Of a stretch of 64,000 nt of DNA, positions 176 through 32,852 are shown piece by piece. Within the stretch, counting starts at the first letter, position 1. Each line of letters opens with the position of its first letter. The notes beneath the pieces are model-generated. The model was not told the origin of the DNA. It saw only the letters and a program-made list of their open reading frames with translations, and did no database searches. This DNA comes from Selaginella moellendorffii (lineage: Eukaryota; Plantae; Lycopodiophyta): contig NW_003314261.1 of NCBI RefSeq assembly GCF_000143415.4, positions 3,588,880-3,652,879 of the forward strand. Reading direction: 5' to 3'. A program made the position numbers and the translations under genes.

Positions 176-217
176 TATGGCATGCAATTCATAAAAGGGT
201 GAGTGTTACTGTGGTAG
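176..217 (+). repeat. Left TIR of host DNA transposon
   Basis: tatggcatgcaattcataaaagggtgagtgttactgtggtag aligns with the reverse complement of the right end, tatggcgtgcaattcgtaaagggtggattttacaatggttg. Confidence 0.85.
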
Positions 218-802
218 ATTTCACTCACAATACAACATCCATGTGGCAGTTTTCTATTGGTTCAGCATTAAATGTCATTTGGATGCCTCATGGATACCCC
301 ATGGATGCTGGCCCGATGGGTCAATGATGTCCCCATAATATGAACAATGTGTGATACATAGATGCCACATATCATCAAATTTGACCCCATGACATAGGGA
401 TTCATTAGGTCATAGGGTGCCTTAGTGCCCTGCTTTAGTGCTATGTTATTCAGCATGTTTCTTGGTAGCAGATATGGAAGGTAACTTGGTTTGCTAGTGA
501 TTAGTTTCAAATATTTTTGTGGGCAGTGTTGGAAGTGGCTTTGATTTACTACTCAATTGATCTGTATGGACTTTCAAGTTCCTACCATGAGTATAGTTTT
601 CTCCCTAATTTACTTCAAATTTGTGTCACTGAAACTTTTTCTTCCAGGTTTACTGGAAGACGTGGAGGAAGATGAGGTGGATGGCCTTCCATCCAATTTT
701 AGTGATTCAGACTATGGTTCCAGTATGGATAGTGATAACAATGCTCTCCCAAAGGTTTGTTTAGTTTCTAGCCTCCTAAATTCATGATTTGCATGTTTCT
801 AG

Positions 803-937
803 GCCTTCTATAATTTTTTGCAATCGAGGGGATTCAGTAGTCCAACTGCATTTGGCACTTGGATGCACCTGAAGATCCTCGAGACTAAGATTACTGCTTA
901 CCTCGCATGCTATCTTAAAATTTCCAAGCCAACACTG
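803..937 (+). pseudogene. Transposase fragment 1 (N-terminal, HTH-like)
   Basis: Exon after a ttctag acceptor reads AFYNFLQ...YLACYLKISKPTL and continues in frame as YKYMQ at 16202 once element A1 and one TSD are removed. Confidence 0.65.
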
Positions 938-2737
938 TGTGAGACACAAAATCCCTAGGCCCCAAAGTGGAGCCGGAAGGGCGCCACATGGTAGTGGCCG
1001 AAGCGAGAGCCAAACGAGCGTAACACGTTTGGACCAAAAGCTCCGACTTGAAAAGTCAAGAGCGGGAGTGGAACTCCCAACGAAGTGCTCGAGGAACGAG
1101 CACGAAGCAAGCAAAAGGCGAGGCTCCAAAAAGGGACCCAAAAGGACCAAAACATGACACGTGGGAGTGTCCAAGATGGACTCGAGTTGGAGTCCGAAGT
1201 GGAGTCCGAGATGGACCCGAGTTGGAGTCCGAAGTGGAGTCCGACATGGACCCGAGTTGGAGTCCGAAGTGGAGTCCGAGATGGACCCGAGTTGGAGTCC
1301 GAAGTGGAGTCCGAGGTGGACCCGAGATGGACCCGAGTTGGAGTCCGAAGTGGAGTCCGAGATGGACCCGAGTTGGAGTCCGAAGTGGAGTCCGAGATGG
1401 ACCCGAGATGGAGTCCGAGATGGAGTCCGAGATGGAGTCCGAGGTGGACCCGAGATGGACCCGAAATGGAGTCCGAGATGGAGTCCGAGATGGACCCGAG
1501 ATGGAGTCCAAGATGGAGTCCGAGATGGAGTCCGAGGTGGACCCGAGATGGACCCGAAATGGAGTCCGAGATGGACCCGAGATGGAGTCCGAGATGGACC
1601 CGAGATGGAGTCCGAGATGGAGTCCGAGATGGAGTCCGAGATGGAGTCCGAAGTCGAGACCGAGACCGGGACCGAGACCGAGACCGAGACCGAGATCGGG
1701 ACCGAGACCGAGACCGAGGCCGAGGCCGAGACCGAGGCCGAGCCCGAGTCCGAGTTCGAATCCGAGTCCGAGTCCGAGTCCGAGTCCGAGTCCGAGTCCG
1801 AGTCCGGAGCCTGAGAGGGTGAAAGCCCAAAGCGTTCGTCTCCCAGACCCTGGGGGGTTTGGTGAGCTCCAAAAGTATAGTAAGGGGGAGGACTGCAGTG
1901 GAGCCAGTTTGGCCAGGAAAGGCCAGTTTGGCCCAGAAAGGCCGGACCCAGTGTTGGGTGATGAGCTGCCCACTGGGAAGTCCAAGACTAGAGTGAACAC
2001 GGACCGACAAGCGGGGTAGCTTGGTGAAGTGTTCAAGAGCCGGCTCTAGTTCCCCCGGGAGATCGACTGGCCGATGCTCCCAGTCCAAGTGTGGGTGGCA
2101 CTACCTACTTGGATACCTGGTGTGGCTCAACGGAACCCGCTCTAAGCCCATGGCTAGAGCACCCAAGGGCAGAAGGCGAGGAGAGTACCCAGGTGGCTCG
2201 CGTAAGGCCACGGTGTTCCGAAATGTTGTCCCAAAGGCCCAGACTGTGGAAAGGAAGAGGAGCAGTCCTCTGGGGTAGTGACCAAGGACACAGTCGTGTG
2301 GTGAGGAAGTCCCAGAGGACTGTGGGACTTAGTGGTCGGGCCTGTGGGTCTCGATCCAGTGGTAGTGTTGGCGAACACAGCCAAGGACAGAAAGGGACTT
2401 GGTGGGGACCGGAATAGAGATATTGGGGAAGGCTATTCCCCATGTCTGTAGGCATCCTAAGGATGTTAAAGAGTGGATATGAGATGATCACTCATGGATG
2501 GATGACCCAGTCTTTGAGAGACGGGATTGGAATGTAGGTGGTGTTGGACCACCAGTGTGACCGAGGTAAATGGGCATGGCCTTAGCGTAACGGGCCGATA
2601 TGTCGGTGGTACCTTGAGGTGTCGATCATGGGATCGGACACGTGGAGCACTTGGACCAAGTGCTAAGGTTGAGTGGCATGGATGCCATTCTCGGGGCTAG
2701 CAAGCCCCAAGTCCTGAGTTGGGCTTATGGAGGTTGT
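938..2737 (+). repeat. A1 5' LTR, first part (resumes at 10249-10321 after the A2 insertion)
   Basis: Near-identical to 14406-16196; broken at GTTGT. Confidence 0.93.
1175..1808 (+). repeat. Complex mini/microsatellite within the family A LTR (GGAGTCCGAGAT / GGACCCGAGAT units, then CCGAGA and CCGAGT hexamers); present in all A LTRs
   Basis: Directly visible tandem arrays; source of the spurious low-complexity ORFs. Confidence 0.92.
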
Positions 2738-4494
2738 TGTAAGCGACTAAATTTTCCATTCTACTTTAGTCACTTAACCACACCTCCGACCACTTGGAGG
2801 AGTCTCATTCACAACCTCCATCAGTCCAATTCAGGACTTGGGACTTGCTAGTCCCAAGAATGGCATCCATGCCACTCCACACTTGCACCTGGTCCAAGTG
2901 CTCCACGTGTCCGGTCCTGAGACCGACACCCAAAGGTACCACTGACATCTCGGCCCGTTACGCTAAGGCCATGCCCATTCACCTTTGCTGCACTAGTGGT
3001 TCAACACCACTTGCATCACCACCTCGTCTCTCCAAGACTGGGCCATGTGTCCACGAGTGGTCATCCTAAATCCACTCCTTAGCATCCTTAGGATGCCCAC
3101 AGACCTGGGGAGTTGCCTTCCCCAAAGTCCCTTTGTCAGTTCCTACCAAGTCCCTTTCTGCCCCTGGCCGTGTTTGCCAACACTGCCACTGGATCGAGGC
3201 CCACAGGCCCGACCACTAAGTCCCACGGTCCTCTGGGACTTCCTCACCACATGACTGTGTCCTTGGTCACTACCCCAGAGGACTGCTCCTCTTCCTTTCC
3301 ACAGTCTGGGCCTTTGGGACAACATTTCGGAACACCGTGGCCTTACGCGAGCCACCTAGGTACTCTCCCCACCTATCGCCTTTAGGTGCTCTAGCCATGG
3401 GCTTAGAGCGAGGTTCCATTGAGCCACGCTTGGTATCCAAGTAGGTAGTGCCACCCACACTTGGACTGGGAGCATCGGCCAGTCGATCTCCCGGGGGAAC
3501 TAGAGCCGGCTCTTGAACACTTCACCAAGCTACCCCGCTTGTCGGTCTGTGTTCACTCTAGTCTTGGACTTCCCAGTAGGCAGCTCATCACCCAACACTG
3601 GGTCTGGCCTTCCTGGGCCAAACTGGCCTTTCCTGGCCAAACTGGCTCCACTGCAGTCCTCCCCCCCTACTATACTTTTGGGGCTCACCAAACCCCCCAG
3701 GGTCTGGGAGACGAACGCTTTGGGCTTTCACCCTCTCAGGCTCCGGACTCGGACTCGGACTCGGACTCGGACTCGGACTCGGACTCGGACTCGGATTCGG
3801 ACTCGGACTCGGGCTCGGGCTCGGTCTCGGCCTCGGCCTCGGTCTCGGTCTCGGTCCCGATCTCAGTCTCGGTCTCGGTCTCGGTCCCGGTCTCGGTCTC
3901 GACTTCGGACTCCATCTCGGACTCCATCTCGGACCCCATCTCGGGTCCATCTCGGACTCCAACTCGGGTCCATCTCGGGTCCACCTCGGACTCCAACTCG
4001 GACTCCATCTCGGACTCCATCTCGGACTCCATCTCAGACTCCACTTCGGACTCCAACTCGGGTCCATCTCGGGTCCACCTCGGACTCCACTTCGGACTCC
4101 ATCTCGGACTCCACTTCGGACTCCATCTCAGACTCCACTTCGGACTCCATCTCGGACTCCACTTCGGACTCCATCTCGGACTCCACTTCGGACTCCATCT
4201 CGGACTCCATCTCGGGTCCATCTCGGACTCCACTTCGGACTCCAAGTCGAGTCCATCTCGGACACTCCCACGTGTCATGTGTTGGTCCTTTTGAGTCCCT
4301 TTTTGGAGCTTCGCCTTTTGCTCGCTTCGTGCTCGTTCCTAGAGCACTTCGTTGGGAGTTCCACTCCCGCTCTTGACTTTTCAAGTCGGAGCTTTTGGTC
4401 CAAACGTGTTACGCTCGTTTGGCTCTCGCTTCGGCCACTACCATGTGGCGCCCTTCCAGCTCCACTTTGGGGCCTAGGGATTTTGTGTCTCACA
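2738..4494 (-). repeat. A2 3' LTR (1757 bp)
   Basis: Direct repeat of 8544-10243; adjacent to PPT. Confidence 0.92.
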
Positions 4495-7400
4495 ACTCCA
4501 CCACCCATAGACGAAGTTCGATGTCCTCATCGAACGGTAAACCCTTTCATAAAGTAACACCCACATGTGTTACCATTTCCATCTTTGGCACCTAGCCAAT
4601 CTTTGTCTATGGTTTGACATCAAAGGCTCACCATGCCTTGTCCATCCTTTAAGGAGCGTAGTCTCTCCAATTTAGAGACTGATTGGACCACATGTAATGG
4701 TTCATCCTTTTATTGGTTTAGTTCTCGCCAAACCTCTTAGAGACCCTTCTCTAAGTCAATCCCACTACTCCTTCTCGAGTAGTCTCAATTTCCATCGATA
4801 TAACCTTTGCACTTTGGAACTTTGAATTTTGACTTCTTGGAGTCAATTTCTTAGGTGTCTCCGACACCTTGCCTTGCACCTTTTGTGCAACTCCACTTCC
4901 CATCCTAGGAAGTTCTCTACTCGAGGGCACCATCATCCTCTCTTCTATTTCGTGCCAAAGTTCCAGTTATCATACTTTGTGCTAGGGCTTGTTCCTGGCC
5001 CTATCATTTGGCTACCTTACCGCTCCCTCCCTTGGAGCTTCCACTTTCGCCAAATCGGAGCATTTCGGAATCCCTCCTTGGAAACACACTTCCTTTCCCG
5101 CAACTTGTTAGCGTCCAACACATTAGTGTTCCTCGCCTAACTTTGTCACTTGGATTCCTTCCAAGGGATTCCACGGCCCTATCTTGGCCACTCATCTTTT
5201 GCTCCTATCCGTTGATTGTTGCACCAAGCAACATCGAATCTCTACCTCCCTCCTTGAGGTATTGTTTCGGTTCCATAGCAAAGACTCTTCTTTGCCAAGT
5301 CCGGAGGATGTTCACCCCTAGTACGTCTCTTTAGCATCTTCTGCTATGGGCTCACGGCCCAACTTCGTGACCCTCCCATGGGTCTTTTATAGAGACTACT
5401 TTCCTCGGACTCACTATGCCATCGCACGGACATAGTTTATTTCCCTTAGGTGCTCTTCCCACTTGGTCATCACGACCAAGCCACACCACCTTAAACAGTT
5501 CAATTTCAACATTTTGAACCAGGAACTTCATTCCTTAGCCAACCAAGGACCTTGTCCTTATCTGGCCATAAGATCACCTAGTGATCTCACCTTGGCACCT
5601 TAGCAGAGTTGCCAAGAGGTACTTGGTCTTCTAGACCTCCAAGTTGTTAACTATAACCCCGGGGGCATCCCCCACACTTGGCGGTGCACCCAAGCCAGCC
5701 CTTACGGCCAAGGGTTCATAGCAACTGAGATTAGGTGTCCCCATCTCACTCACCACGACCTTGGTGCCACTTGCACCAAAGCGTTCAAGTTAGATATGCT
5801 GAGCTTTCACACTAAGCAATCTAACCGTGCATCACGACTCCGAGGCATCCCTCGCTTGGCGGTGTGCCCAAACCAGTCTCCCCACTGAGAGTCCATGACC
5901 ACCGAAATATGAGTGTCCTCATATTCCAAACCATCACCACGCCCTAGTGATTTGGGACTCGAACCCAAGCACTAGAGGGTCGGGACTCGAACCCAACCTC
6001 CGTATATGCATCTACGGACGGCATCACACGAGATGCCTGGCGTGACTCCCCACGCCGGTGCACCAACTTATTTTTAAAGCGCGCTACTGATCACAGCTTA
6101 GGAACCTAGTTCCTCCATACTGCCAAGTCCTCTCACTTGACATGTCTGTGATCATGCATGGACTCCTCCATGTTCGGCCCCATGGCCCACCCTTTTTGAA
6201 GTTATCACCTTCAACTAGGGTCTTTGTTCCCCCGACGTGCCAATCTCACTTGGCAAGTTCTCCGACCATTGTAACATGGTTCCTGCATAAGCGTGAAAGT
6301 CCTTGACCATCGACTTTCGTTCAAAGCCCTCTCTTTGAACACTCGGGAACTACTTCCCTAACCTTGATAACCTTGCCTCATGGCAAGCTTCAAGACCACG
6401 CTTCTGCTGCGCCACTCTGATTTCGCGCGTTCCATGAACCATTTACACTTGGCCTTTCTAGGTACTACGCTACCTAGAATCGTCTTTGGGAACCTTGAAG
6501 GAACTCTATCCCTCAGCTTGCTAAGGCCTCCCTTTTTGCAAGCCTTCCAAATGCCATATAGTCTAACATGGACAATTCCATATTTTAGACTCTCCATGGC
6601 ATCACGGTTGCTAGCGGCAACACCCTTGAGCCCCCACTTGATTTTCCACTCCCAGCTGGCATAACCAACCTTGGTTATGCCCTTTGATTTCTATGGTTCA
6701 GTTCCATCCCAACACTACTTGCCTTTGGCTTCACACCTTTCCTTCGGTCATTCTCCTCCAGACCAGGAGGATAGCTTTGCACTTTCTATCATGCCTTAGC
6801 AAGTATTCTTAGGGATGAACCTACCCAATAGCCCAGGGAGTGGTTCCTCAATCCGGGTATGCTCAGCTTATAATCCCACACCCTGGGGTTACATTGTTGC
6901 TTATGGGCCTTTACATGCCCATCACTAGCCTTGCCAAAATTCCATTTTTGGCTTTGTCCAACTTGGGTAGACAGTCCTCTCCTGTCTCCGCAACCTTGAA
7001 CATTTGGATAGCACCTTCTATCCACCATTCGCTAGGGACTTAGTCCCTTGGGCTTTATCCATTGCCCTCGCTACATCAAACACCACCTCTTGGTGTTCTA
7101 GAGTGTTCGGGTGTCCCAATGACGGCTTCCTTGACAATGAGTATTTCCTTTCATGACATTGACTTACTATATCGCAACATAAGCAATTTATCCCCCGTAA
7201 GGGTATATCTAACTTCTTTATACCATTAAGAAGTCTTGGGTAGTTACCTTCTACCCGCTTAACCAATTATCTTGCACCTCTTGCTTAGTTGCCCCATAGC
7301 TGTCAAGTCTTACAACTCATTGCTTAGTGCTTCCACACCTCCATCATTATCTGGGTCACCACACTCCAACCGCATGCCTTCCAGCTTAGGCCTTGCCATT

Positions 7401-8543
7401 CCCATTTCCATTGGGACTCCTTTGGCAAGGGGTCCTCATGAACCCAACAACATAGCCTCAAGGTATCACACCTTGGCACATTTGGTGTCTCCACACCATC
7501 GGCTCCACGAGCCTACCTCTATGACACTTTTTCTTTGTGTCTAAGTCTTTGCCAAGACCAATACCGCTCTTTCTCATGCCAACCATTTGTTAGCACGGCA
7601 CTATAGAGGTCACACACAACTTTGTGTCAAAGTTGTTTTCTATTTGGGAACACCTTTCCCACGACTTTTAGCACGGCACATTTTGCCATCGATGAGATAC
7701 CCTCTATTCTCATCCTTGGATCCTATGATCCCCCCCCATCCTTCGTGGGGTAAAACACACCTCAGTCCAAATGCTTCCATCAGTCCTTTTAGGACCATCC
7801 CTTGACTCTACTTGAGTCGTCTAGCAACTTTGGACTTGGTTAATCCACCGACCCATAAGGTTCTACTTGTGAGGCACTAGCTCACTGGAATACACTTCTT
7901 GCATTCCTGTCCTACTCAAAAGGACTATTTTCACAAGTGTTACTCCGACACTTGATTTTGTTCTCTGGGGGCAACCTTTGCCCCTTAGGACTACTTGTCC
8001 ATGTGATGAGAACACCAACTCATCCACTTAATACACCCCCAACTCCTGGGGTTGTTCCAGCATTTATTAGAGGTAGCCCCGGCTACCTTTTCAAGGACTT
8101 GAGACCTCTTCCGTATTTGACCTCCCACGGTCATTACTTCTGGTCTCACATTCATGAGCACCAACCTCAACTATATGAGGAAAATCTTGTGACTCCTTTA
8201 TTGTTTTGGAGTCTCTATCTTTCCCGTGATCCCAACTATAGTTATTTACCACAACTACATTAGCCAGTTTGCTAAGTCAAACGCTCATCTGGATCACATC
8301 CTCAACTCTTTGAGGAAAACCATATACTGTTCCCAAGATCCCAAAGTCGTTCCATTATTGGCCCTTTTCTATCCACCACCTCGTCTACAAGTTCACACAT
8401 GAACTGTAATGGAGAGCCATGTCTTCCCGACTTGCTACTCCTCAAGGATAGGCCCACTCCTCGGACCTTCCGATGCCAACACTAGTGGTGATATACTTGA
8501 GCACTAATAAAAGTCGGACTAAGGAACAGCTCCGATACCAAAT

Positions 8544-10243
8544 TGTAAGCGACTAAATTTTCCATTTTACTTTAGTCACTTAACCACACCTCCGACCACT
8601 TGGAGGAGTCTCATTCACAACCTCCATCAGTCCAATTCAGGACTTGGGACTTGCTAGTCCCAAGAATGGCATCCATGCCACTCCACACTTGCACCTGGTC
8701 CAAGTGCTCCACGTGTCCGGTCCTGAGACCGACACCCAAAGGTACCACTGACATCTCGGCCCGTTACGCTAAGGCCATGCCCATTCACCTTTGCTGCACT
8801 AGTGGTTCAACACCACTTGCATCACCACCTCGTCTCTCTAAGACTGGGCCATGTGTCCACGAGTGGTCATCCTAGATCCACTCCTTAGCATCCTTAGGAT
8901 GCCCACAGACCTGGGGAGTTGCCTTCCCCAAAGTCCCTTTGTCAGTTCCTACCAAGTCCCTTTCTGCCCCTGGCCGTGTTTGCCAACACTGCCACTGGAT
9001 CGAGGCCCACAGGCCCGACCACTAAGTCCCACGGTCCTCTGGGACTTCCTCACCACATGACTGTGTCCTTGGTCACTACCCCAGAGGACTGCTCCTCTTC
9101 CTTTCCACAGTCTGGGCCTTTGGGACAACATTTCGGAACACCGTGGCCTTACGCGAGCCACCTAGGTACTCTCCCCACCTATCGCCTTTAGGTGCTCTAG
9201 CCATGGGCTTAGAGCGAGGTTCCATTGAGCCACGCTTGGTATCCAAGTAGGTAGTGCCACCCACACTTGGACTGGGAGCATCGGCCAGTCGATCTCCCGG
9301 GGGAACTAGAGCCGGCTCTTGAACACTTCACCAAGCTACCCCGCTTGTCGGTCTGTGTTCACTCTAGTCTTGGACTTCCCAGTAGGCAGCTCATCACCCA
9401 ACACTGGGTCTGGCCTTCCTGGGCCAAACTGGCCTTTCCTGGCCAAACTGGCTCCACTGCAGTCCTCCCCCCCTACTATACTTTTGGGGCTCACCAAACC
9501 CCCCAGGGTCTGGGAGACGAACGCTTTGGGCTTTCACCCTCTCAGGCTCCGGACTCGGACTCGGACTCGGACTCGGACTCGGACTCGGACTCGGACTCGG
9601 ATTCGGACTCGGACTCGGGCTCGGGCTCGGTCTCGGCCTCGGCCTCGGTCTCGGTCTCGGTCCCGATCTCAGTCTCGGTCTCGGTCTCGGTCCCGGTCTC
9701 GGTCTCGACTTCGGACTCCATCTCGGACTCCATCTCGGACCCCATCTCGGGTCCATCTCGGACTCCAACTCGGGTCCACCTCGGACTCCAACTCGGACTC
9801 CATCTCGGACTCCATCTCGGCGTCCATCTCAGACTCCACTTCGGACTCCATCTCGGACTCCACTTCGGACTCCATCTCAGACTCCACTTCGGACTCCATC
9901 TCGGACTCCACTTCGGACTCCATCTCGGACTCCACTTCGGACTCCATCTCGGACTCCATCTCGGGTCCATCTCGGACTCCACTTCGGACTCCAAGTCGAG
10001 TCCATCTCGGACACTCCCACGTGTCATGTGTTGGTCCTTTTGAGTCCCTTTTTGGAGCCTCGCCTTTTGCTCGCTTCGTGCTCGTTCCTAGAGCACTTCA
10101 TTGGGAGTTCCACTCCCGCTCTTGACTTTTCAAGTCGGAGCTTTTGGTCCAAACGTGTTACGCTCGTTTGGCTCTCGCTTCGGCCACTACCATGTGGCGC
10201 CCTTCCAGCTCCACTTTGGGGCCTAGGGATTTTGTGTCTCACA
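8544..10243 (-). repeat. A2 5' LTR (1700 bp)
   Basis: Direct repeat of 2738-4494; adjacent to PBS. Confidence 0.92.
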
Positions 10244-10324
10244 GTTGTGAATGAGACTCCTCCAAGTGGTCGGAGGTGTGGTTAAGTGACTAAAGTAGAA
10301 TGGAAAAATTAGTCGCTTACAATT

Positions 10325-10336
10325 TGGTATCGGAGC
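10325..10336 (+). promoter_or_regulatory. Primer-binding site, tRNA-iMet type (A1)
   Basis: TGGTATCGGAGC 3 nt after the LTR end; same motif in A2 and B. Confidence 0.88.
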
Positions 10337-17782: not shown

Positions 17783-17845
17783 ACTCCACCACCCATAAAA
17801 GAAGTTCGATGCCCACATCGAACGTCTCGTTTTATCCTACGACTT

Positions 17846-22000: not shown

Positions 22001-23016
22001 CTTCTTGAATTTCCCCCTGCTATATGTTCCCCTCGGTTTGGCCCCTTTGTGAAACGTGGATCCCGACCCCGTCGTGTTCCCCTTTCGCAGGTTATCGTTG
22101 AAATGCACCTTGATGGCCGCATCCAACGCTTCCTTGTAGTTGGTCGGGTTCCAGCGCATCACCTCACCGCGAGCCCAGGTTTGCAAACCTGATATAAAGG
22201 CATGGAATGCATCCATATCCCCCATGTCCGTGACAAGTATCCTCTTTGCCATGAACCCATTCACATATTCCTAGATGGTTCCAGTCTGCTTCAGCCTACT
22301 CAGCTCATCTCTCAGATGCAGAGTGGCATTCGGAGGAACGTATGTCGCGCGGATCCTCGCCTTCATCATATCCCAGGTGGCCACCGGTCCTTCGTTGGCC
22401 TCCGTTGTTCTCCACCAAGACTTGGCATTATCTGCCAAGTATGGTTTTGCACATGGGACCTTCTCCGAGCTCGGTAACCGTAACGCTCGGAAGTAGTCCT
22501 CCATATCGTAAAACCAATCCTCCACAACCTTATAGTCGTTCACTCCCTTGAACACCGGTGGGGGCTTTGGTTTGTACTTGGGAACTGCCTGAGGGACTGA
22601 TTCCACTTCGGTCTGTTCGACCTTGTCTGGTTTTGCCTCAGTCCCTGCCGAAGGGTCTGCACCTTCTGCGCTGCCTTCATCCGCAGTCTTTCGCTTTTTC
22701 TTCCGCTTCTCGTCACGCTTTAACTTGCGTACGAGAGTCTCCAGCAGGGCATTGGTCTATGCCAACTGTCCTTCTAGCACGTCCAATCGAGCCTTGGACG
22801 ACCGAACCTCGCCACCGGACTCCTGTTTGGAAGTTTCCTCACTAGAGTCCTCCTCATGCAAGGATTCCTCATCCATAGCCTCTTGTTCAACCGGAGGCTC
22901 CAGCTCCGGCGGAGGTTCCGTCTCCGTCTGGGTTCGCTTACGCCCTGCCCTTGCCATCTCCCAGCAATCCGCCTCTATCCTTCGCTAGAACTGAGATAAA
23001 GGCTCCGATACCAAAT

Positions 23017-24164
23017 TGTAAGCCACAAATTTTTCCTTTCCAATTTGCCAGCTTACCTCGTCTATCCGTCCAACATTGCCTTGGCTTTTGCTAAGTCCCC
23101 TTGCCAAGGTTCTCGCCTATGGTACCAGCTCCTACTTGGTTTCAGCTACTCACTGCACGAGCAACGGGGTGTTAGCCATCCTTCCACGGATTCCCAAATC
23201 ACTCCCAATCCCCCTCCCCGGGTTAGACTGGACTTAAGGTTCGGCTACACTCCCCGCAAGCACAAGCAGCCAAGCACACCAAGCTTCCAGGTTCCTAACA
23301 TCCCTTGGTACCACAAGACTTGATCATGGGACCCTCTAAATCCCAAGTCTTGAGTGCAACACTTGCTTCGGGATGCCGGGGCGAAACACCGTGGCCTAGC
23401 AGCCCGGTATGGGTACCTCTCGCCCCCCACTTCCATCCCGAAGGAAGGCCCAAGCCCCTAGGAAGGGCGAGGACCAATGAGCCGCATGGTACTCAAGTGG
23501 GGCACCACTCCACATGAGCCGGGAGCACCGCAATCGGTTTCCCTTTCGGGAGTGGGAGCTGCTCTTGAGCACTTCCTTGGATGGCCCCTCCGGCACCAGC
23601 CAAGTCCATGCTCACTCCCACCCAAGGCCCCTCGGTCCCAGTCTCAACCTCAAGTCGGTTTGGAAGCCCAACTGGAGAGTCCCTTCAAAACTGGTTCCTG
23701 GACCTCACTATCCCTACTATACTTTTGGAACCCCCTGCAGCCCCCCCCCCCCTGGGAGACGCACGCTTTGGGCTTTCACCCCTTGACCCGTATTAGTATT
23801 TGGACTTAGTCTCTGGCTCGATCTCGGACCCGATTTCGGATCCGACTTCGGATTCGGGTTCGGACTCGATCACGGACTCGATCTCGGACCCAATCTCGGA
23901 CCCGACCTTGGACTTGACCTCGGACTCGGTCTCGGACCCGATTTCGGATCCGGACTCCGTCTCGAACTCGGTCTCGAACTCGGACTCGAACTCGGTCCCC
24001 GAGTCGGTCTCGGACTCGATTCCAGACTCTATCTCGAACTCGGTCCTAGAGTCGGTCTTGGACTCGATCCTCGACTTAGTCCCATCCGATGAACTCTTTG
24101 TCATTTCGGTCAAGCTTTTGGGGATCCTTTAGCCTACGACATCTCGGGGAGTCGGTTCCTTACA
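23017..24164 (-). repeat. B 5' LTR (1148 bp)
   Basis: Direct repeat of 16636-17782, TG...CA ends. Confidence 0.95.
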
Positions 24165-24169
24165 GCGAG

Positions 24170-24610
24170 CTAGCTACCTCCAAAAAATCCCATGCAATAT
24201 TCAACACATATGCACAAGTTGTTCATCGATTTGGAAGGCCCAAGTGCATCTGGAGCGACAATGCTCCAGAGCACAATGAGGTTGAGAGGGACATGGTCCG
24301 TTGTTGGGGTCCTGTAGCTAGGAGTTTCATACGTGGGACATCAACACGTAACTAGGTACTCACAGCATTAGAGTTTTTCCAAATAAGGACTAAATCAAAT
24401 TTGTTTTACAGCACATAGAGCATTTGTGGAGAGAGCTTTTTGAGTGCATGGTGTGGTTTTATAAGCACCTTTTTTGAGTCCATGGAAGATGTAGGAATTT
24501 TCAATGTATCTAATCCATGGCATAACCAAAGTCTACATTATGTTTTTGCTCCATACCTCAAGAAGGATATTTCACACTAGGTTGCAACATAGAACTTCCA
24601 TGAGGTCTGT
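24170..24610 (+). pseudogene. Transposase fragment 3 (second Asp and Glu of the DDE core)
   Basis: LATSKKSHAIFNTYAQVVHRFGRPKCIWSDNAPEH...SFIRGTSTRN*[intron ~24356-24410]HIEHLWRELF...(frameshift)...SLHYVFAPYL...*NFH; in frame with fragment 2 across the GCGAG TSD. Confidence 0.8.
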
Positions 24611-26599
24611 TCATATCGATGTGGTGATTACTTTAGACTATCTCATGTTACAACAAATTTATTTCAACCAATGGAACAAGAGTTTGGGTAAGAATTTTGG
24701 TATTGTTACAGAATCCTTTATAAATTGTGCTTTTGTAGAATTATGCCGGCTGTTGGTGGAAAAGATATTGAAGACCTTTCTGGATTATTTCTCTCCAATG
24801 TCAAAGGTGCAACTTTGTCAGAGGTAATCTTTAAAGCAAGAATAGAACAATTTCTTTAAATCTATTTCGTTGTGCTTGGTTACCTTATAGGATTTTGGCA
24901 CTATTCAAAACCAGGCATTTTTTATGCATTGGAAGGGACTCAACTTGGACGAGCAATATTTACTTCATTTGGATCTAACAATGGAGTGTGCAATATTTGA
25001 TGTTGTAGGTGTAGATTTACCATTTTACATTAAGAATGCATTGCCTACAACAACACTAGTGAAGCGACGAGCTTTGGAAAAATTATACTTGGCCATACTC
25101 GGAGAAAATTGAGTGTTCTTTAGTGTACATTTCAAAATTAAATTAAATTCTTGATTTCTTCAATTTTAGGGTTCCCATGCGGGATTAGCATATTAATTAT
25201 ACCTTGATACGAGGCAATTTCATTTTATGACATGATTTTATCAATAGTTCGTTTGTTCTTCCAATCGGTTTGCATCATCTAACTGGAGGCAAGGCTTCTA
25301 GTGCACACTCCTCCGATCACAGGACCATCGCCCAAGCAAGAGCGCCACAGCTATGATAGTGGGTAGCTTCTCCTTGATCATGTTTGCATAACTAATCCCT
25401 TGTGGCTTTTAGGCTCGAAACAAGAACGCCGCACGCCTCAACAGCAGTAGACACTATGCAGGAAACACCTCGCAAGCACGTAGCCAAGCACGCAATATTC
25501 TGCAATCGGTACAGCCAACAGTCCTATGAGACACACACCAGCCATTTGATTTTCCAAGCTCTGCAACATGGACATTAACTCCAACAACATCCCATCCACA
25601 GCTCCTGACTGCAGTTGAGCAAGCAGAGTGCCACCTAACATTGCATACACTACAACATATGGAGAACCTCCAACATGTTTTGTTCTCCTCGCCTTCCTTG
25701 GAAAGTAGCAGCCCGAGCATCCGAAATGAGCAAGTTCGAATGTCTCATGCCCATGGTGTTGTCCAATCTAGAATGCTGCCACCAACACCAACTACAAGAC
25801 GTGCTTACAGAACCCCATATAGTGCCATTGTTACTAGCCTTGCAACTCCACCAGCCACTACAACTCTCGCAACTCAATCTACCGGTACAAATGCCAGTAT
25901 CTAGCCATCTACCTCCTGAAGCAACAAGTGCTTTAGCTCGATAAGTTTTTCATTTTTACTTGTTTTTTTTCCATGTGTTTTCTGTGTAGGGTGACTTGAT
26001 AATGCCGCCACACCAACAAGCTTATAATTCCCCATCAGCATTCCACAACTACTCCCAATGATCAACATCATCATCTAGTGGAGCTTTGACATCCAGATAT
26101 GTTCAAGCTAACCCTCAAGGCAAGCTGCCATGTGAGCCACATAATAACATGACTCCATGCACTCTTTTTTTTTTTTTTGGATTTGTTTAACTTATTTTTG
26201 TTTCACTATGCTAGATTGTCTCACTGCTTGTGGCTGCAATGCACACCTATGCCGATAACAATCGGCAGTCCTTATCTTGTCGTTGTGGACATTATAGCAA
26301 TCGATCCAAAGTCATTGGTGGGATGTCGTCTACAACACCCTTGATCCCTTGGTTGTTCACCACAATTCTTGTCACCAAGTGGATTGCAATCCTAAAGACT
26401 TGGCATGTACACTTGTATGGGTGGAAAAGAAAGCTATCTATGAAGGTGACAGAACTTGACGAGCTGGCAGTGGACCTCCTAGAGTGTCTCATATGGGGTG
26501 GCTTATACTTTAGTATTCCTTTCCAACCCGGCATGGCCCAACATGTGATTCTACTATCACTCCAAGCCTTAAGAATCCAACCTTCATCCATGACCAACC

Positions 26600-27702
26600 T
26601 GTAAGCGACTAATTTTTCCATTCTACTTTAGTCACTTAACCACACCTCCAACCCCTTAGAGGAGTCTCATTCACAACCTCCATAAGTCCAATTTAGGACT
26701 TGGGACTTGCTAGCCCCAAGAATGGCATCCATGCCACCCCACACTTGCACCTGGTCCAAGTGCTCCACGTGTCCGGTCCCAAGACCGACACCCAAAGGTA
26801 CCACTGACACCTCGGCCCGTTACGCTAAGGCCATGCCCATTCACCTTTGCTACACTAGTGATCCAATACCACTTGCATCACCATCCCGTCTCTCCAAGAC
26901 TGGGCCATCTGTCCATGAGTGGTCATCCTGGATCCACTCCTTAGCATCCTTAGGATGCCTACAGACCTGGGGAATCGCCTTCCCGAAAGTCCCTTTGTCA
27001 GTTCCTACCAAGTCCCTTTCTGCCCCTGGCCGTGTTTGCCAACACTGCCACTGGATCGAGGCCCACAAGCCCGACCACTAAGTCCCATGGTCCTCTAGGA
27101 CTTCCTCACCACACGACTGTGTCCTTGGTCACTACCCCAGAGGACTGCTCCTCTTCCTTTCCACAGTCTAGGCCTTTGGGACAACATTTTGGAACACCGT
27201 GGCCTTACGCGAGCCACCTGGGTACTCTCCCTGCCTTTCGCCTTTAGGTGCTCTAGCCATGGGCTTAGAGCGAGGTTCCGTTGAGCCACGCCTGGTATCC
27301 AAGTAGGTAGTGCCACCCACACTTGGACTGGGAGCATTGGCCAGTCGATCTCCCGGGGGAACTAGAGCTGGCTCTTGAACACTTCACCAAGCTACCCCGC
27401 TTGTCGGTCCGTATTCACTCTAGTCTTGGACTTCCCAGTGGTCAGTTCCTCACCCAACACTGGGTCTGGCCTTCCTGGGCCAAACTGGCCTTTCCTAGCC
27501 AAACTGGCTCCACTGCAGTCCTCCCCCTACTATACTTTTGGAGCTCACCAAACCCCCCAGGGTCTGGGAGACGAACGCTTTGGGCTTTCACCCTCTCAGG
27601 CTCCGGACTCGGACTCGGACTCGGACTCGGACTCAGACTCGGACTCGGATTCAGATTCGGACTCGGACTCGGGCTCGGGCTCGGTCTCGGTCTCGGTCCC
27701 GA

Positions 27703-27737
<35 letters not shown>

Positions 27738-28350
27738 ACTTCGGACTCCATCTCGGACTCCATCTCGGACTCCATCTCGGACTCCATCTCGGACTCCATC
27801 TCGGGTCCATCTCGGACTCCATCTCGGACTCCATCTCGGGTCCATCTCGGACTCCATCTCGGACTCCATTTCGGGTCCATCTCGGACTCCATCTCGGACT
27901 CCATTTCGGGTCCATCTCGGGTCCATCTCGGACTCCATCTCGGACTCCATCTCGGACTCCATCTCGGGTCCATCTCGGACTCCATCTCGGACTCCATCTC
28001 GGGTCCATCTCGGGTCCATCTCGGACTCCATCTCGGACTCCATTTCGGGTCCATCTCGGGTCCATCTCGGACTCCACTTCGGACTCCAACTCGGGTCCAC
28101 CTCGGACTCCATCTTGGACACTCCCACGTGTCATGTGTTGGTCCATTTGGGTCCCTTTTTGGAGCCTCGCCTTTTGCTCGCTTCGTGCTCGTTCCTTGAG
28201 CACTTCGTTGGGAGTTCCACTCCCGCTCTTGACTTTTCAAGTCGGAGCTTTTGGTCCAAACGTGTTACGCTCGTTTGGCTCTCGCTTCGGCCACTACCAT
28301 GTGGCGCCCTTCCGGCTCCACTTTGGGGCCTAGGGATTTTGTGTCTCACA
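26600..28350 (-). mobile_element. Solo LTR of family A (1751 bp)
   Basis: tgtaagcgac...gtgtctcaca flanked by TSD CAACC (26595-26599, 28351-28355); no PBS or PPT. Confidence 0.93.
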
Positions 28351-30019
28351 CAACCCAGGAGCATTTATCCAGCATGCAAGGCAATCCAATGGTGGTGAGG
28401 CCCATGCTGAGTCTACAAAATTTGGCCTCAGCTCTATCCGGCCTTGCTATTGGCCTCCTCGAACATCATAGGGAGCTATAGCAAACAAGGCCAATGGCAA
28501 TTGGGCAACAGTAATATACTTATACAATGTTATGGAGCATTTTATTAACAAACATTGGCTAAGTTATCAAAAACAGGCTCGAGCACTCGAGGAGAAGGAT
28601 GTTCATGAACGTAAGTCATTTTTTTTTTTTAAGTTCCCTCCTCACAAATATATGTTGTGGTCTTTACAATTGTAGTTGCTACAAATACCTTGACTCCAAA
28701 TGATGATCCCTTGGTGATAGAGCCATTTCTTTGAAGGCCAGCCACGCAAGAACCAAACCAAGACGAGAATAATGAAGAAGAAGACTCTACAGATGAAGAA
28801 GATATTCTTCCATTACCGAAAGAAACTCTCCCCACACAAGACAACATGGACATCATCAGAGTCAAAGAACAAGGTGATGGTGGGGATGAATCACACCAAG
28901 GATCTCCGAAGACATCCTTATCACCAGAGATAGTGGCTCCAAGCCATGCGGCCGGTAAAAAGCATTAACATAAATGAATATTTTCGTCATTTTCTAATTT
29001 TTGTGTGCAGATAGGCCAATGGTAGTGTATGACAGTGATGGCGGAGGCTTTGAAGACCATGGTGTGCCTCCACCCCCTTTCTAGAGGGAAGTAGCTCCAC
29101 TCCGCTTACTTATGGAGTTGCTTGACAACTTTTCTACAGTAGAGTAAGATAATTGAAAATTGTACTATTCAAAATTAAACTAACGTTTGCATGTAGATTG
29201 TTGGAACATCAATAATGATGGATTGATGCCACCAATGCATTTAATGAAGCTGTTTGATTAACCACTCAAGATAGTGCCAACTTCATCATGCTGCAGCATG
29301 AGGAGGTTTTTGCTTTACAGGATGCCACCACAGCCCTTGAGGTGAGGGCACAGAGGGATGCTGAAGTTCTCTCATAGGTGTAGTGGCTAAAACACAAGTT
29401 TCTTGGTTGCTTTGGCATGGAGAGCACAAGTGACGAAGAGACACTAGACGCTGTTGCTAAACACCCTGAGTTCCATTGGGCTGGCAGTGAAATATTTCTT
29501 CAACGCGTGTTTTTCAGCCAAACCATGCCTCATTGGCAGGATTGGGAGAGTGTTCTCCTTAAGCTTGGCCTTTCAAAAACATAGTATGACGATGTGTTTT
29601 GTGACAACACAATCTAATAGCTCCTTGCTGAAGTAAGTATCAATGTGCCATCTTCAATTGTTAAGTCCACAATAGCATAGTTCATTGAGAAGAAGTACAT
29701 GTATCTATTTCTTAGCACTTAGTACCATCTTATTGTTTTGTGCAGGAACCTACGTAGGAATTGGGGGGCTGCACAACAATTGAGAGAATTAGTGACACTA
29801 CTAAAACATTATATTGTAAGTTCTCTCGTTTTTGCATCGAGAAGGCCATGCTTCAGCCATATAGACTTGCTTGTACACATTTGAGGTCATCTCACATTCT
29901 GGTAAGCAATGGATTGCCTATGAATTGGAGTTCCCTTACTTGTCCTTCCAGATTGCACCAAACAATGAATTCAGTTGTTTCTAATTCGCCAATATTAATC
30001 TCCACACACTGAATTATAA

Positions 30020-31220
30020 AGTGGTCTATGCGTTTGAGATTGGAGGAGCTTAGGAATCCACAATAGATGTGGGTGAGCCACATGCAAAAGCCATTAAGGA
30101 GGTTGTTCGCCAAATTCCAGGATTGGTAAGTTTAATTTTCACTTGGCTCACTAGAATAACTTTGTGTTACAGATATATAGACTGTTTGTGCTTAGGGAAA
30201 GAGTCACATATTGGCATCCCAGGATGCTAATGCATTCTAGGACATTGTGACAAGAAGAGCGGTATGTGGTAAATTAAGTTTAAAGCACAAGTTTTATATG
30301 CTCCTCATTTCTATATGCACAGGCTATTTTTGTGGGATGGTTGTTATTCCAAGCGTTCGAATGTAATGCACAGGTATCTCACGGGTGTACAATTGCAACA
30401 TTGGTAATTGCAGCTGGAGAGGTTCTAGATGAGAATGACCGAAGACTTGCCCGAGGAGGACTATACGAGATGGACCTCAAGGCATGCATGCCGCATATCT
30501 GGAATGCACTCAACCAATTGCGAGGTGCATTAAGCTTAAAGGAGGAGGGCAATTGGCACAAGTATGTGGATTCCATCCTAGAGAACCTTGCAATTACCGA
30601 CTACAATGCAGTGCTTGAGTCTAGACTTACTGAACTTAGTGAAGGTTATGAGTAGGTTGTGGAGGCATGCATAGCTATAGTGGTCTGGTATTACTTATTC
30701 ATCGAGCCAAACGTAGTGGGAGACTTATGTGCATGGAAGCTTGTCAGAGGCCTTACAAGAGTCCAGCATTGCTAGGTGGGCTTTCACTCATTGGGACAGA
30801 TGCTTTATTATAGGCCTTTTGGGTAAAGATGATCATTCCTCCCGCGGAGTTCATCAACTGCTTAATCTTTGATCAGGACTTTGGAGAGAACTTCCATAGC
30901 TGGATTGTGGACATCATTCGAGGTAACTATTTATTTTCACAAACAATTAAAACTTTTGTATATTTGAACATTTTATAGATATGAGCCCGAAAGAGTTATC
31001 TAAGTTCCATCACTTTGCGGTTGATTCTTCAGAGTTCCAACTGGGAGAGCCTATTTTGATCTAAGTTGAAAGACAAAATACATCATCTATTCGATTTCCT
31101 AGGTTTTCCACATGCATACAAGAAGTTTTCTTTCCTTTAACATACCCGTCAATGGAGTGGACTAAACACAAGATCCATTGAACACTCCAAAATCTAGAGA
31201 GCTTGTATGGATTGGGCTGA
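30020..31220 (+). pseudogene. HECT E3 ubiquitin ligase-like domain (second gene of the DNA transposon; decayed upstream exons probably from ~24.9 kb)
   Basis: Exon pieces TIDVGEPHAKAIKEVVRQ, GYFVGWLLFQAF and a C-terminal FPRFSTCIQEVFFPLTYPSMEW...LYGLG* (Cys codon 31113-31115, stop 31218-31220) resemble the HECT P.A.TC...L.LP.Y.S...GF motif; internal stops. Confidence 0.6.
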
Positions 31221-31956
31221 TGTTGTGGAAGTAATCTAGACACTTTCACAATAAAAATAAATAATTGTCTTGAAATATGTTTCACACTTTGAAAAAGACT
31301 CTTTCCAGTTCATTGGTGAAGTTAAAGGTAAGAATATTCAAAATATTCCACAAATGCCCATTATAAGCACTTGTAGCCCTTTTGGCTTATGCTTGCTATA
31401 GCTTCTAAAGCAACTCCCAATTTAGGATTTGGGTCAAAACTATCAAGCTTAGGTGCTACATGATGCCCATCCTTGCTTGAGGAACTCTCAACCTGTTTCA
31501 TGGTAGAACCAAAATCACCTTTGGGTCTGTAAATTCATCTTTGCTTGCATCTTAAGCAGTAACATATCCCTCATTGTCACTTTCTTCAGTAGGACCTTTC
31601 CCCTTAGTGATTGGCACAACATTAGAAGTAGTCTTGGGCTGCCTTGTTAGAGGGATTGTCAAGCCTTGAGAGGAGGAGGCATCATATAGAATCCTCGGTC
31701 CTATCCCTTGTTGAATCTATTGTTATGCCTCAAAGAAGTCATAGAATCCTCTCCAATTTGCCATACCAAGAGGAAACCCAGAAATCTCAAATATTGCAAA
31801 AGGGTTAGAGCATATATGAAACTGTCACAAATCTACTCTTACCAAAGTGAGCACGAGCTTTCAATCCTTGAAAACTCCAATTCTTCGGCCGCAGCGCACA
31901 GCATACATTGGATAGTTTTCCCCCATGCTTGGAAACCCTTCTTACAAATTTCAAAA

Positions 31957-32228
31957 TTTGAAACAGTTATAATTGAGAAATATTATAAGTGTCCATTGTT
32001 ATTGCTCTTCTCACTTGAATGTTATTGCATGCAATTGCAACTCCCATATTCTCAAATCTTCTTTAGCATACTCCTCTTGAGAGAACTCCAGGTCCAATTT
32101 GAAACGATTATAATTGGAAAATGTTGAAAGTGTCTATTGTTATCCTAAATGTTACTACATGCAATTGCAACCTTTATATTTTCAAATCTCCTTCAGCATG
32201 CTCCTGTTGAAAGAACTCTAGGTCCAAA
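31957..32228. repeat. Diverged tandem duplication (~130-140 bp x2) inside the DNA transposon
   Basis: tttgaaac..ttataattg...catgcaattgcaac...gaactc.aggtccaa occurs twice. Confidence 0.7.
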
Positions 32229-32811
32229 CATCAACACTATGCACCTTTGTATAGTACACAATTCAAGTATGAGCCCTACCAATTCATCAACTTGATTAGA
32301 CTTCAACCTACTTTTGAATCATATGCAAATCTTTTAAGCATCATGGTACAAAACTAAAGTGTTGAAAATCAATGGCAACGAAAGATTAACTTGATGGGAT
32401 GCATTAGAGATATAACTCCAGACAATATATATCCATGGCTTTGCAATGGAGATAGATGGAGTTCACTTACAATTGCTATGAACAATATGTTAAAAGAGGT
32501 GTGCCAAAAAAGGATAATTCAATTCTTTTGCCATGAGCGCCAAGAGCAAGATGTGAGAACATAGTGCTCTAGATAAGGTAATATAGTATGCAATCTAGTC
32601 GATTGTCCATTTGGTTTGCAACATTAACAACTTGCTAGAATGCATGGGATGAATGGGTCTATGGGTCATGAATGGCTCCATTCCATACATAGCATGGGTC
32701 ATTGCTATGGGCATGATGTTCCATCTGGGGAATAAGGATTGGATATTCGTAAAATATTATATGCCTGTGTTTTTTTTACACCATAATACACGTGGACCAA
32801 TAGCAGGCATA

Positions 32812-32852
32812 CAACCATTGTAAAATCCACCCTTTACGAATTGCACGCCATA
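32812..32852 (-). repeat. Right TIR of host DNA transposon
   Basis: Reverse complement of the left TIR; followed by TSD CAAAT at 32853-32857. Confidence 0.85.

What the first reader, a model, noticed from the sequence alone, without database searches (positions are those of the whole stretch)
176..32852. Hidden IS3EU-like DNA transposon in a land-plant genome, broken up by four LTR insertions
Seen: ~41-bp imperfect TIRs (TATGG...CCATA), a 5-bp TSD CAAAT, and a transposase whose frame rejoins exactly across the CACTG and GCGAG TSDs (HTH-like ISKPTL|YKYM; CHMD; IVACE|LATS; WSD; IEHLW; W/*NFH). Knowledge: this integrase-core signature is not that of hAT, Mutator, CACTA or Harbinger. From memory, it and the TAY..RTA termini match the IS3EU group described mainly from animals and fungi. 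Inference: a lycophyte representative (ancient retention or horizontal transfer), invisible to ORF-based annotation.
Basis: partly seen in the sequence, partly recalled or inferred. Interest (0 to 1): 0.8.

Follow-up and report, generated by a model that had tools for sequence, protein, structure and literature searches.

The report
Dead GingerRoot/IS3EU transposon in Selaginella
This is a real but long-dead cut-and-paste DNA transposon of the IS3EU/GingerRoot superfamily in the clubmoss Selaginella moellendorffii, split by four retrotransposon insertions. The superfamily was already described in Selaginella in 2019, so only its 5-bp target duplication and a possible ubiquitin-ligase-like second gene are new details.

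Summary
Window 176-32852 is one ~8.1-kb DNA transposon with ~45-bp inverted ends (TATGG..CCATA) and a perfect 5-bp target duplication (CAAAT). Four LTR-retrotransposon events, each with its own 5-bp duplication, interrupt it. Uninterrupted sister copies elsewhere in the genome run straight across all three junctions. The window is S. moellendorffii scaffold GL377565.1. The transposase matches Pfam PF24764 (rva_4 integrase core), has DD35E spacing and the NQRIEHLW motif, and lacks an HHCC zinc finger. It matches published IS3EU/GingerRoot alignments, most closely GingerRoot SL_GR-020 of S. lepidophylla.

All nine copies of this family that I inspected carry stops or rearrangements, so the family looks dead.

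Two points differ from the published description:
- Five complete copies have perfect 5-bp duplications, none extendable to the usual 6 bp.
- Every full-length copy carries a second reading frame whose C-terminus weakly resembles a HECT ubiquitin-ligase C-lobe. This is unconfirmed.

Interest is low to moderate.

The parts
171..175 (.). Left copy of the 5-bp target-site duplication, CAAAT
   Evidence: It is identical to 32853-32857 and does not extend to 6 bp.
176..222 (+). Left terminal inverted repeat (TATGGCATGCAATTCATAAAAGGGTG...)
   Evidence: The same end is found in L001-L004 and L007-L010.
635..754 (+). Transposase exon coding the acidic N-terminal stretch (LLEDVEEDEVDGLPSNF...). The true start codon is not defined.
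   Evidence: tblastn of P0121, P0124 and P0133.
803..937 (+). First part of the transposase exon with the HTH-like segment (...YLKISKPTL). It is cut by the LTR insertion at 938.
   Evidence: It aligns to the HTH region of coral protein P0145 through paralog P0122.
938..16201 (.). LTR retrotransposon insertion 1, TSD CACTG. Its LTRs are 938-2737 (continuing after 10248) and 14406-16201.
2738..10243 (.). LTR retrotransposon of the same family, opposite orientation, nested in the 5' LTR of insertion 1. TSD GTTGT; LTRs 2738-4494 and 8544-10243.
16202..16496 (+). Continuation of the transposase exon (YKYM...CHMD). Catalytic D1 is at 16493-16495. In-frame stops lie at 16304-16306 and 16364-16366, and the splice donor at 16497-16498 reads AT where the sister copies read GT.
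16556..16635 (+). First part of the transposase exon running from the D1 tail to D2 (YCKFVSYSFYVHAIICGATH*IVACE). Stop at 16618-16620. Cut by insertion 2.
16636..24169 (-). Ty3/gypsy LTR retrotransposon insertion 2, TSD GCGAG. LTRs are 16636-17782 and 23017-24164 as aligned (99% identical). The pol ORF is 19070-22264 on the minus strand.
24170..24355 (+). Continuation of that exon (LATSKKSHAIFNTYAQVV...IWSDNAPEHNEV...STRN). Catalytic D2 is at 24257-24259. The last codon is TAG where sister copies L002 and L003 have CAG.
   Evidence: Pfam PF24764 rva_4, E 4.5e-5, profile positions 44-102.
24412..24690 (+). Transposase exon with catalytic E (HIEHLW; E at 24418-24420) and the C-terminal core. A +1 frameshift lies in the T-run 24470-24475, and stops lie at 24578-24580 and 24590-24592.
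   Evidence: Pfam rva_4, E 1.3e-4, profile positions 121-157.
24737..26599 (+). Further plus-strand coding-like blocks that the gene models of sister copies include: 24737-24853, 24897-25109, a Pro/Ser/Thr-rich stretch at 25395-25940, and 26527-26599. Their status as exons is unproven.
26600..28355 (.). Solo LTR, TSD CAACC, of the same family as insertions at 938 and 2738.
28352..31217 (+). Second coding region (ORF2), with several stops in this copy. Its last exon, 30978-31217, is HECT C-lobe-like (RFPRFSTC...LYGLG).
   Evidence: tblastn of P0132 and P0133. Pfam HECT hits below the curated threshold: E 2.2e-4 to 4e-4.
32806..32852 (-). Right terminal inverted repeat.
32853..32857 (.). Right copy of the 5-bp target-site duplication, CAAAT.

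Best explanation
Window 176-32852 is one decayed, non-functional copy of an ~8.5-kb autonomous DNA transposon family of the IS3EU/GingerRoot superfamily in Selaginella moellendorffii.

When the family was active (inferred from the anatomy and from what is known of DDE enzymes), it would have worked as follows:
- A spliced gene coded a transposase with an N-terminal HTH-like DNA-binding part and an RNase-H-fold DD35E integrase-type core.
- The enzyme bound the ~45-bp terminal inverted repeats, cut the element out and pasted it elsewhere.
- It attacked the target strands 5 bp apart, which gives the 5-bp duplication.

After this copy landed at CAAAT it decayed. It now has at least six in-frame stops, one +1 frameshift and a lost splice donor. 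Three LTR retrotransposons and a later solo LTR then entered it, one of them nested inside another. Those insertions inflated 8.1 kb to 32.7 kb.

Shown here: structure, copies, target duplications, homology and lesions. Inferred: the cut-and-paste chemistry and TIR binding by the HTH.
For: 1. Termini and TSD in the window.
2. Eight further copies of this family on other scaffolds of the same assembly, several of them partial or rearranged (L001-L004, L007-L010). Four complete ones have perfect 5-bp TSDs at unrelated sites: GAGAG (L002), TTTTT (L003), GAATG (L007) and GCTCA (L008). L004 has CAAGC/CAAAC.
3. The sister copies are contiguous across all three insertion junctions.
4. Pfam PF24764 rva_4 matches two exon pieces of the window and scores above threshold in paralog proteins P0121-P0124 and P0133. 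The rve model scores lower.
5. No Integrase_H2C2 or zinc-finger hit appears. The gypsy pol in the same window does show one, which serves as a positive control.
6. D-58-D-35-E spacing, read from P0121, P0122 and the window.
7. The published alignment (PMC10045372, Fig. S1 and Data S3) shows IS3EU and GingerRoot motifs matching ours: LWHxD..KL, IDGxSR, R(S/T)D.G.E, HNQRIE(R/H)LW. Against SL_GR-020 of S. lepidophylla, 22 of 40 residues match by eye in the D1 block.
8. The termini fit the TAYGG..CCRTA ends with TIRs above 30 bp that are reported for IS3EU (PMC12730594).
9. A profile search finds rva_4 relatives in corals, a sea anemone, a sponge and many fishes, which is the published GingerRoot/IS3EU range. 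P0122 against a coral protein gives 28% identity over 195 residues, E 6e-22.
10. All copies carry private stops, and substitutions are spread evenly over codon positions, as expected for neutral decay.
Against: - The TSD is 5 bp, whereas GingerRoot and IS3EU are described with 6 bp ('usually', PMC10045372; PMC6839031).
- The TIRs are ~45 bp, against 100-150 bp in S. lepidophylla GingerRoot.
- The comparison with named IS3EU and GingerRoot sequences was by eye against a published alignment.
- No intact copy was found, so activity and the splice pattern are inferred from computational gene models.
- The start codon is undefined.
Confidence: 0.9

Rival explanations
1. It is a Ginger2/TDD (or Ginger1) element. 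These are the other eukaryotic DNA transposons with integrase-like transposases, and Ginger2 makes 4-5 bp duplications.
For: The 5-bp TSD fits Ginger2 (4 or 5 bp; PMC10045372). The best Repbase match of GingerRoot in 2019 was Ginger2-1_HM (PMC6839031). There is a weak Pfam rve hit.
Against: The E-block motif is NQRIEHLW, as in IS3EU/GingerRoot, and not the GS(V/I)ER(A/G)N type shown for Ginger2 in the same alignment. rva_4 outscores rve. There is no HHCC or GPY/F domain. The termini are TA..TA, whereas the TG..CA/TGT ends recorded in these sources belong to LTR elements, IS3/IS481 and a minority of GingerRoot copies; the Ginger1/2 termini themselves were not checked here.
Confidence: 0.04
2. 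It is a host or domesticated integrase-derived gene with introns, and the inverted repeats and pentamer repeat are coincidence.
For: The coding region is spliced. Sister copies are annotated as ordinary hypothetical genes.
Against: At least nine copies lie at unrelated loci, with the same ends and different 5-bp duplications. All are riddled with stops. Substitutions show no codon-position bias.
Confidence: 0.01
3. It is a remnant of an LTR retrotransposon or a Maverick/Polinton, whose integrase is all that remains recognisable.
For: 5-bp TSDs are typical of LTR elements. The integrase-like core is related to rve.
Against: The ends are inverted, not direct. There is no RT, RNase H, protease, gag, pPolB or capsid signal anywhere in the 8.1 kb. 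There is no HHCC finger. Uninterrupted copies are 8.5 kb, with the same two coding regions only.
Confidence: 0.01
4. This rival concerns ORF2 only. The second coding region is not a HECT relative but a family-specific protein of unknown fold, or gene-model noise, and the Pfam hit is chance.
For: The Pfam HECT score of 21.4 bits is below the curated 23.9. Only the C-lobe matches and the N-lobe pieces give nothing. There is no PDB sequence hit. The AlphaFold models had pLDDT 30 and 48, and Foldseek gave noise. There are no homologues outside S. moellendorffii. There is no codon-position signal.
Against: HECT is the only Pfam family reported at E<=1 for P0132 and the only one at E<=10 for the L008 C-lobe exon, with library-wide E 2e-4 to 4e-4. 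The match runs to the very C-terminus (741/747 against 301/306). A Cys lies 35 residues from the end within FSTCTRE..FPLTY..LYGLG; from my own knowledge of HECT domains, that is where the catalytic Cys sits. UniRef independently names P0132 'HECT domain-containing protein'.
Confidence: 0.35

Closest known systems
GingerRoot (Cerbin, Wai, VanBuren & Jiang 2019, PMC6839031), from Selaginella lepidophylla
   Same: Same plant genus and the same transposase type. The SL_GR-020 motifs HMDSY.KL, GAT..IVAC, IFN.YA.AV and NQRIEH match ours. Termini are TA..TA, there is no HHCC/GPY motif, and element size is ~8-9 kb.
   Different: TSD is 5 bp here against 6 bp. TIRs are ~45 bp against 100-150 bp. This family looks older and dead: copies are 90-97% identical and all are disabled, against a mean of 98% in S. 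lepidophylla. No second HECT-like ORF is mentioned in that paper, and S. moellendorffii is not mentioned in its main text.
IS3EU superfamily (Repbase, Kapitonov/Bao/Jurka 2012-13; Kojima & Bao 2023, PMC10045372; Kojima 2025, PMC12730594)
   Same: Termini of the form TAYGG..CCRTA, TIRs above 30 bp, a DDE core with HNQRIE.LW, no HHCC finger, and Pfam rva_4-type relatives in fish, cnidarians and other animals.
   Different: The usual TSD is 6 bp. The accessory genes known in rust-fungus (Pucciniales) IS3EU are TET/JBP dioxygenase and alpha-kinase, whereas the candidate here is HECT C-lobe-like.
Ginger2/TDD
   Same: Integrase-like DDE transposase in a TIR element, with a 4-5 bp TSD.
   Different: Different E-block motif and a different Pfam best model. 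I did not compute a tree. The published tree (PMC10045372) places IS3EU/GingerRoot away from Ginger1 and Ginger2.
Prokaryotic IS3/IS481 transposases
   Same: DD35E RNase-H-fold core without HHCC. TSD length varies by subgroup; the IS2 subgroup makes 5 bp (PMC10045372).
   Different: Those are bacterial, with TG..CA ends, no introns and often programmed frameshifting. This one is a spliced eukaryotic gene inside an 8.5-kb element.

Membership tests
IS3EU/GingerRoot superfamily | DDE transposase of the IS3EU/GingerRoot type: rve-related core, D..D..35..E, and the (H)NQRIE(R/H)LW block | tested here: met
   Pfam PF24764 rva_4 matches window exons and paralogs above threshold. DD35E spacing is present. 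Motifs were compared by eye with the published alignment of IS3EU and SL_GR sequences. The relatives found share the published host range.
IS3EU/GingerRoot superfamily | No HHCC zinc finger or GPY/F module around the core | tested here: met
   No such Pfam hit in P0121-P0124 or P0133. The gypsy integrase in the same window does hit Integrase_H2C2.
IS3EU/GingerRoot superfamily | Termini TA...TA (TAYGG..CCRTA) with terminal inverted repeats | tested here: met
   TATGG..CCATA in the window and in all copies with ends. TIRs are ~45 bp: more than 30 bp as in fungal IS3EU, and shorter than the 100-150 bp of S. lepidophylla GingerRoot.
IS3EU/GingerRoot superfamily | 6-bp target-site duplication (described as 'usually' 6 bp) | tested here: not met
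   Five complete copies have perfect 5-bp TSDs that do not extend to 6 bp, and a sixth matches at 4 of 5 positions. The source bp usual rather than obligatory. I therefore file the element in the superfamily on transposase and termini, and flag it as a 5-bp lineage.
IS3EU/GingerRoot superfamily | Monophyly with named IS3EU/GingerRoot transposases in a computed tree | not testable with these tools
   Repbase and GingerRoot sequences are only visible as text in a supplement and cannot be loaded. No tree was built.
Ginger2/TDD | Ginger2-type core (GS(V/I)ER(A/G)N E-block) and Ginger-type termini | tested here: not met
   The E-block is NQRIEHLW, compared with the Ginger2 rows. The ends here are TA..TA; the Ginger termini themselves were not checked against a source.
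HECT ubiquitin ligases (ORF2 only) | C-terminal bilobal HECT domain with a catalytic Cys ~35 residues from the C-terminus | tested here: inconclusive
   C-lobe only: Pfam HECT E 2.2e-4, 21.4 bits, below the cut-off of 23.9. A Cys lies at -35. The N-lobe was not detected, no PDB hit was found, and the structure models were of low confidence.

The most novel reading that the evidence does not exclude
S. moellendorffii holds a distinct lineage of IS3EU/GingerRoot elements. Its transposase cuts targets 5 bp apart instead of 6. Its ancestral element also carried, downstream of the transposase or fused to it, a highly divergent HECT-type ubiquitin-ligase-like gene. That would be a new kind of accessory gene for a DNA transposon, alongside the TET/JBP and alpha-kinase genes of fungal IS3EU, and it might have been used to manipulate host proteins.
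Probability: 0.45. Interest if true: 0.55.

Novelty: new member of a known kind. Interest (0 to 1): 0.3.

Why it matters
For annotation, this shows that 33 kb which would be scored as retrotransposon plus unknown sequence is one nested DNA transposon. It also shows that about ten S. moellendorffii 'hypothetical proteins' (for example SELMODRAFT_413916, 412061, 421051, 414985, 424697 and 407700) are decayed transposon genes.

For transposon biology, it adds a second Selaginella species and a 5-bp-TSD, short-TIR lineage to a little-studied superfamily. It also raises a testable lead: that IS3EU/GingerRoot elements can carry a HECT-like gene.

It does not change the picture of where the superfamily occurs, because lycophytes were already its type host in plants.

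Tried and rejected
- AlphaFold2 of ORF2 protein P0132, with its four paralogs as the alignment, gave pLDDT 30. The C-lobe exon alone gave pLDDT 48. Foldseek on the latter returned only noise. None of this was used as evidence.
- PDB sequence searches with P0132 and with the ORF2 profile found nothing relevant.
- A protein search with ORF2 found only S. moellendorffii paralogs.
- Pfam on ten other open stretches of 28356-32852 and on 25530-25901 found nothing.
- The codon-position test for past selection on the transposase and ORF2 was flat everywhere, equal to the non-coding rate. It says only that the copies decayed neutrally.
- The far end of the divergent relative in L005 was not found in the locus. 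The right end of L001 is degenerate or missing.
- I considered and rejected hAT, Mutator, CACTA, Harbinger, Polinton and an LTR remnant, on TSD, termini and domain content.
All searches used single exons by reference or database proteins. The only concatenation was of the four host DNA segments, inside a local script, to align them with sister copies.
Full report

Yes. The window starts the element at 176 with TATGGCATGCAATTC... and ends it at 32852 with ...GAATTGCACGCCATA. A 20-base degenerate pattern of this end occurs exactly twice in 64 kb, at these two places and in inverted orientation, against 0.02 expected by chance. The inverted repeat is near-perfect for about 26 bases and recognisable to about 45. 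The pentamer CAAAT flanks both ends and cannot be read as a 6-bp repeat.

Three interruptions have LTR-type ends (TG..CA) and their own 5-bp duplications:
- 938-16201, TSD CACTG.
- 16636-24169, TSD GCGAG.
- 26600-28355, TSD CAACC.

The first contains a further element of the same LTR family in reverse orientation at 2738-10243 (TSD GTTGT), inserted into its 5' LTR. The second insertion has a complete Ty3/gypsy pol. The third is a solo LTR.

**2. The decisive control: sister copies**

A phmmer search with the 61-residue exon piece 24170-24352 found ten proteins. The best five are S. moellendorffii hypothetical proteins. I fetched their loci, and those of further paralogs. They gave eight more copies of the same family, several partial or rearranged, on other scaffolds (L001-L004, L007-L010) and one more distant relative (L005).

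In L001, L003, L004, L007 and L008 the four host segments of the window lie directly next to each other. Window 937 abuts 16202, 16635 abuts 24170, and 26599 abuts 28356, at 84-92% identity. This proves the junctions.

Complete copies are 8.46-8.54 kb. L002 is a 4.4-kb rearranged derivative. Their target duplications are GAGAG, TTTTT, GAATG and GCTCA, all perfect 5 bp and none extendable to 6. L004 has CAAGC/CAAAC.

**3. Where the window comes from**

The sugar-transporter ORF at 46079-47725 is 95% identical to SELMODRAFT_437470. The 21.6-kb locus around that gene is 100% identical to window 36079-57713. The window is S. moellendorffii GCA_000143415.2 scaffold GL377565.1, with window position p equal to record position p + 3,588,879.

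**4. The transposase**

Read exon by exon on the plus strand, the gene is laid out as follows:
- An acidic stretch at 635-754.
- An exon at 803-937|16202-16496, carrying an HTH-like segment (YLKISKPTL|YKYM) and ending at CHMD. Catalytic D1 is at 16493-16495.
- An intron.
- An exon at 16556-16635|24170-24355 (YCKF...IVACE|LATS...IWSDNAPEHNEV...). Catalytic D2 is at 24257-24259.
- An intron.
- An exon from 24412 (HIEHLWRELFE...). Catalytic E is at 24418-24420. It continues through FAPYLKKDISH and *NFH.

Two window pieces hit Pfam PF24764 (rva_4, integrase core) at E 4.5e-5 and 1.3e-4, on consecutive parts of the profile. The paralog proteins hit it above the curated threshold and hit rve more weakly. 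The spacing is D-58-D-35-E. No zinc-finger (HHCC) domain is found, whereas the gypsy integrase in the same window shows one.

The window copy is dead. Its lesions are:
- Stops at 16304, 16364, 16618, 24353, 24578 and 24590.
- A +1 frameshift in the T-run 24470-24475.
- A splice donor GT changed to AT at 16497-16498.

Every other copy has its own private stops or rearrangements. Copies are 90-97% identical, and the window copy is the most diverged. Substitutions fall equally on all codon positions and on non-coding columns. This is what one burst of transposition followed by neutral decay would leave.

**5. What family it is**

Published descriptions agree on the following:
- IS3EU elements end in TA..TA, and in rust fungi in TAYGG..CCRTA with TIRs above 30 bp. 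They usually make 6-bp TSDs (PMC10045372, PMC12730594).
- GingerRoot was discovered in Selaginella lepidophylla and found in lycophytes, bryophytes, fishes, corals and other animals. It has TA..TA ends, 6-bp TSDs, 100-150 bp TIRs and no HHCC/GPY motifs (PMC6839031).
- It is treated as one superfamily with IS3EU (PMC10045372).

The supplementary alignment of that last paper shows the diagnostic blocks. For IS3EU they are LWH.D.NHKL / IDG.SR / R.D.G.EN / HNQRIERLW. For GingerRoot SL_GR-020 they are LWHMDSYDKL..IDGATRFIVAC / IFNNYARAV / NQRIEH. Our family reads (L)YHMDSYCKL..CGATHYIVAC / IFNTYAQAV / NQRIEHLW.

This comparison is by eye, because those sequences cannot be loaded into the tools. It is unambiguous all the same, and it clearly differs from the Ginger2 rows in the same file.

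A profile search returned 296 rva_4 proteins. The named ones come from corals, a sea anemone, a sponge and many fishes. A paralog aligns with a coral protein from the HTH to D2 at E 6e-22.

I conclude that the element belongs to the IS3EU/GingerRoot superfamily and is closest to Selaginella GingerRoot.

**6. What is and is not new**

Its significance claim was not, because a lycophyte is the type host of this superfamily in plants.

I found no open paper that mentions S. moellendorffii together with IS3EU or GingerRoot. I cannot see Repbase. So this is at most a new family of a known kind. It deviates in two family-level traits: a consistent 5-bp TSD and TIRs of about 45 bp.

**7. The rest of the element**

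Downstream, on the same strand, all full-length copies share a second coding region (window about 28352-31217). Gene models either fuse it to the transposase (P0124, P0133) or call it separately (P0132, P0134). It has no relatives outside S. moellendorffii in the search I could run.

Its last exon hits Pfam HECT (C-lobe, profile positions 213-301 of 306) at E 2e-4 to 4e-4, just under the curated score. The match ends at the protein's C-terminus, and a Cys lies 35 residues from the end. UniRef names P0132 'HECT domain-containing protein'.

The N-lobe was not detected. PDB sequence searches, two AlphaFold models and Foldseek gave nothing usable. I treat the HECT-like reading as a lead, at about 60-65%. 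No paper in the library links HECT with IS3EU.

**8. Limits**

Exons were searched singly by reference. The only concatenation was of the four host DNA segments in a local alignment script.
- No phylogeny was built, so horizontal transfer against ancient retention is untested.
- The 5' end of the transposase gene is undefined.

Noticed in passing
window 28352-31217 (+), especially 30978-31217; L008:12434-12700: A second coding region is shared by all full-length copies. Its C-terminal exon weakly matches the HECT ubiquitin-ligase C-lobe, with a Cys 35 residues from the end. No homologues were found outside S. moellendorffii.
   Followed up: partly
window 938-16201, 2738-10243, 26600-28355: Three of the four LTR events belong to one LTR family, and one copy sits inside the LTR of another in opposite orientation. 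LTR pairs differ by only about 0.6-1.1% in substitutions, so these insertions are much younger than the host transposon.
   Followed up: partly
window 1148-1700, 3887-4273, 9693-10022, 14616-15200, 27735-27980: The LTRs of that family carry long arrays of 11-12 and 23 bp repeats (unit like TCCATCTCGGAC). Array-length differences account for most of the gaps between LTR pairs.
   Followed up: no
window 31955-32227: A tandem duplication of about 130-143 bp lies in the 3' subterminal region of the transposon and is present in all full-length copies (L001, L003, L004, L007, L008). It could be a subterminal binding-site array.
   Followed up: no
window ~31150-31720 (-); L003:16476-17066 (-); L007:16377-16967 (-): An acidic 151-residue gene model is called on the opposite strand near the 3' end of the element. 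It overlaps the end of ORF2 and has no Pfam hit. It may be prediction noise.
   Followed up: no
L004:5945-6004 and L004:19133; L009:9704: L004 has an extra right-end TIR with the same 12-bp flank as its regular right end, which suggests a local duplication. L004 and L009 share 11 of the 12 bases of their left flanks. They are probably haplotype or segmental duplicates, so they are not independent insertions.
   Followed up: no
window 39359-39892 and 44730-45447: A dispersed direct repeat of 0.5-0.7 kb, 81-90% identical, lies in the gene-rich half of the window, close to and partly abutting the sugar-transporter gene (seen).
   Followed up: no
window 33000-64000: An ordinary gene-dense plant region follows the transposon. 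It holds DUF7796, an ankyrin-repeat protein, an STP13/MST4-like sugar transporter, GH3 and an F-box/Kelch protein as intron-poor ORFs, plus RecQ helicase, MBD and WASH-domain genes in the matching annotated locus L006.
   Followed up: partly
L005:9582-19080: A more divergent relative of the family (about 70% nucleotide identity; protein P0125) has a TATGGTGTGCAATAT... end and a large internal interruption. Its other end was not found within the fetched locus.
   Followed up: partly
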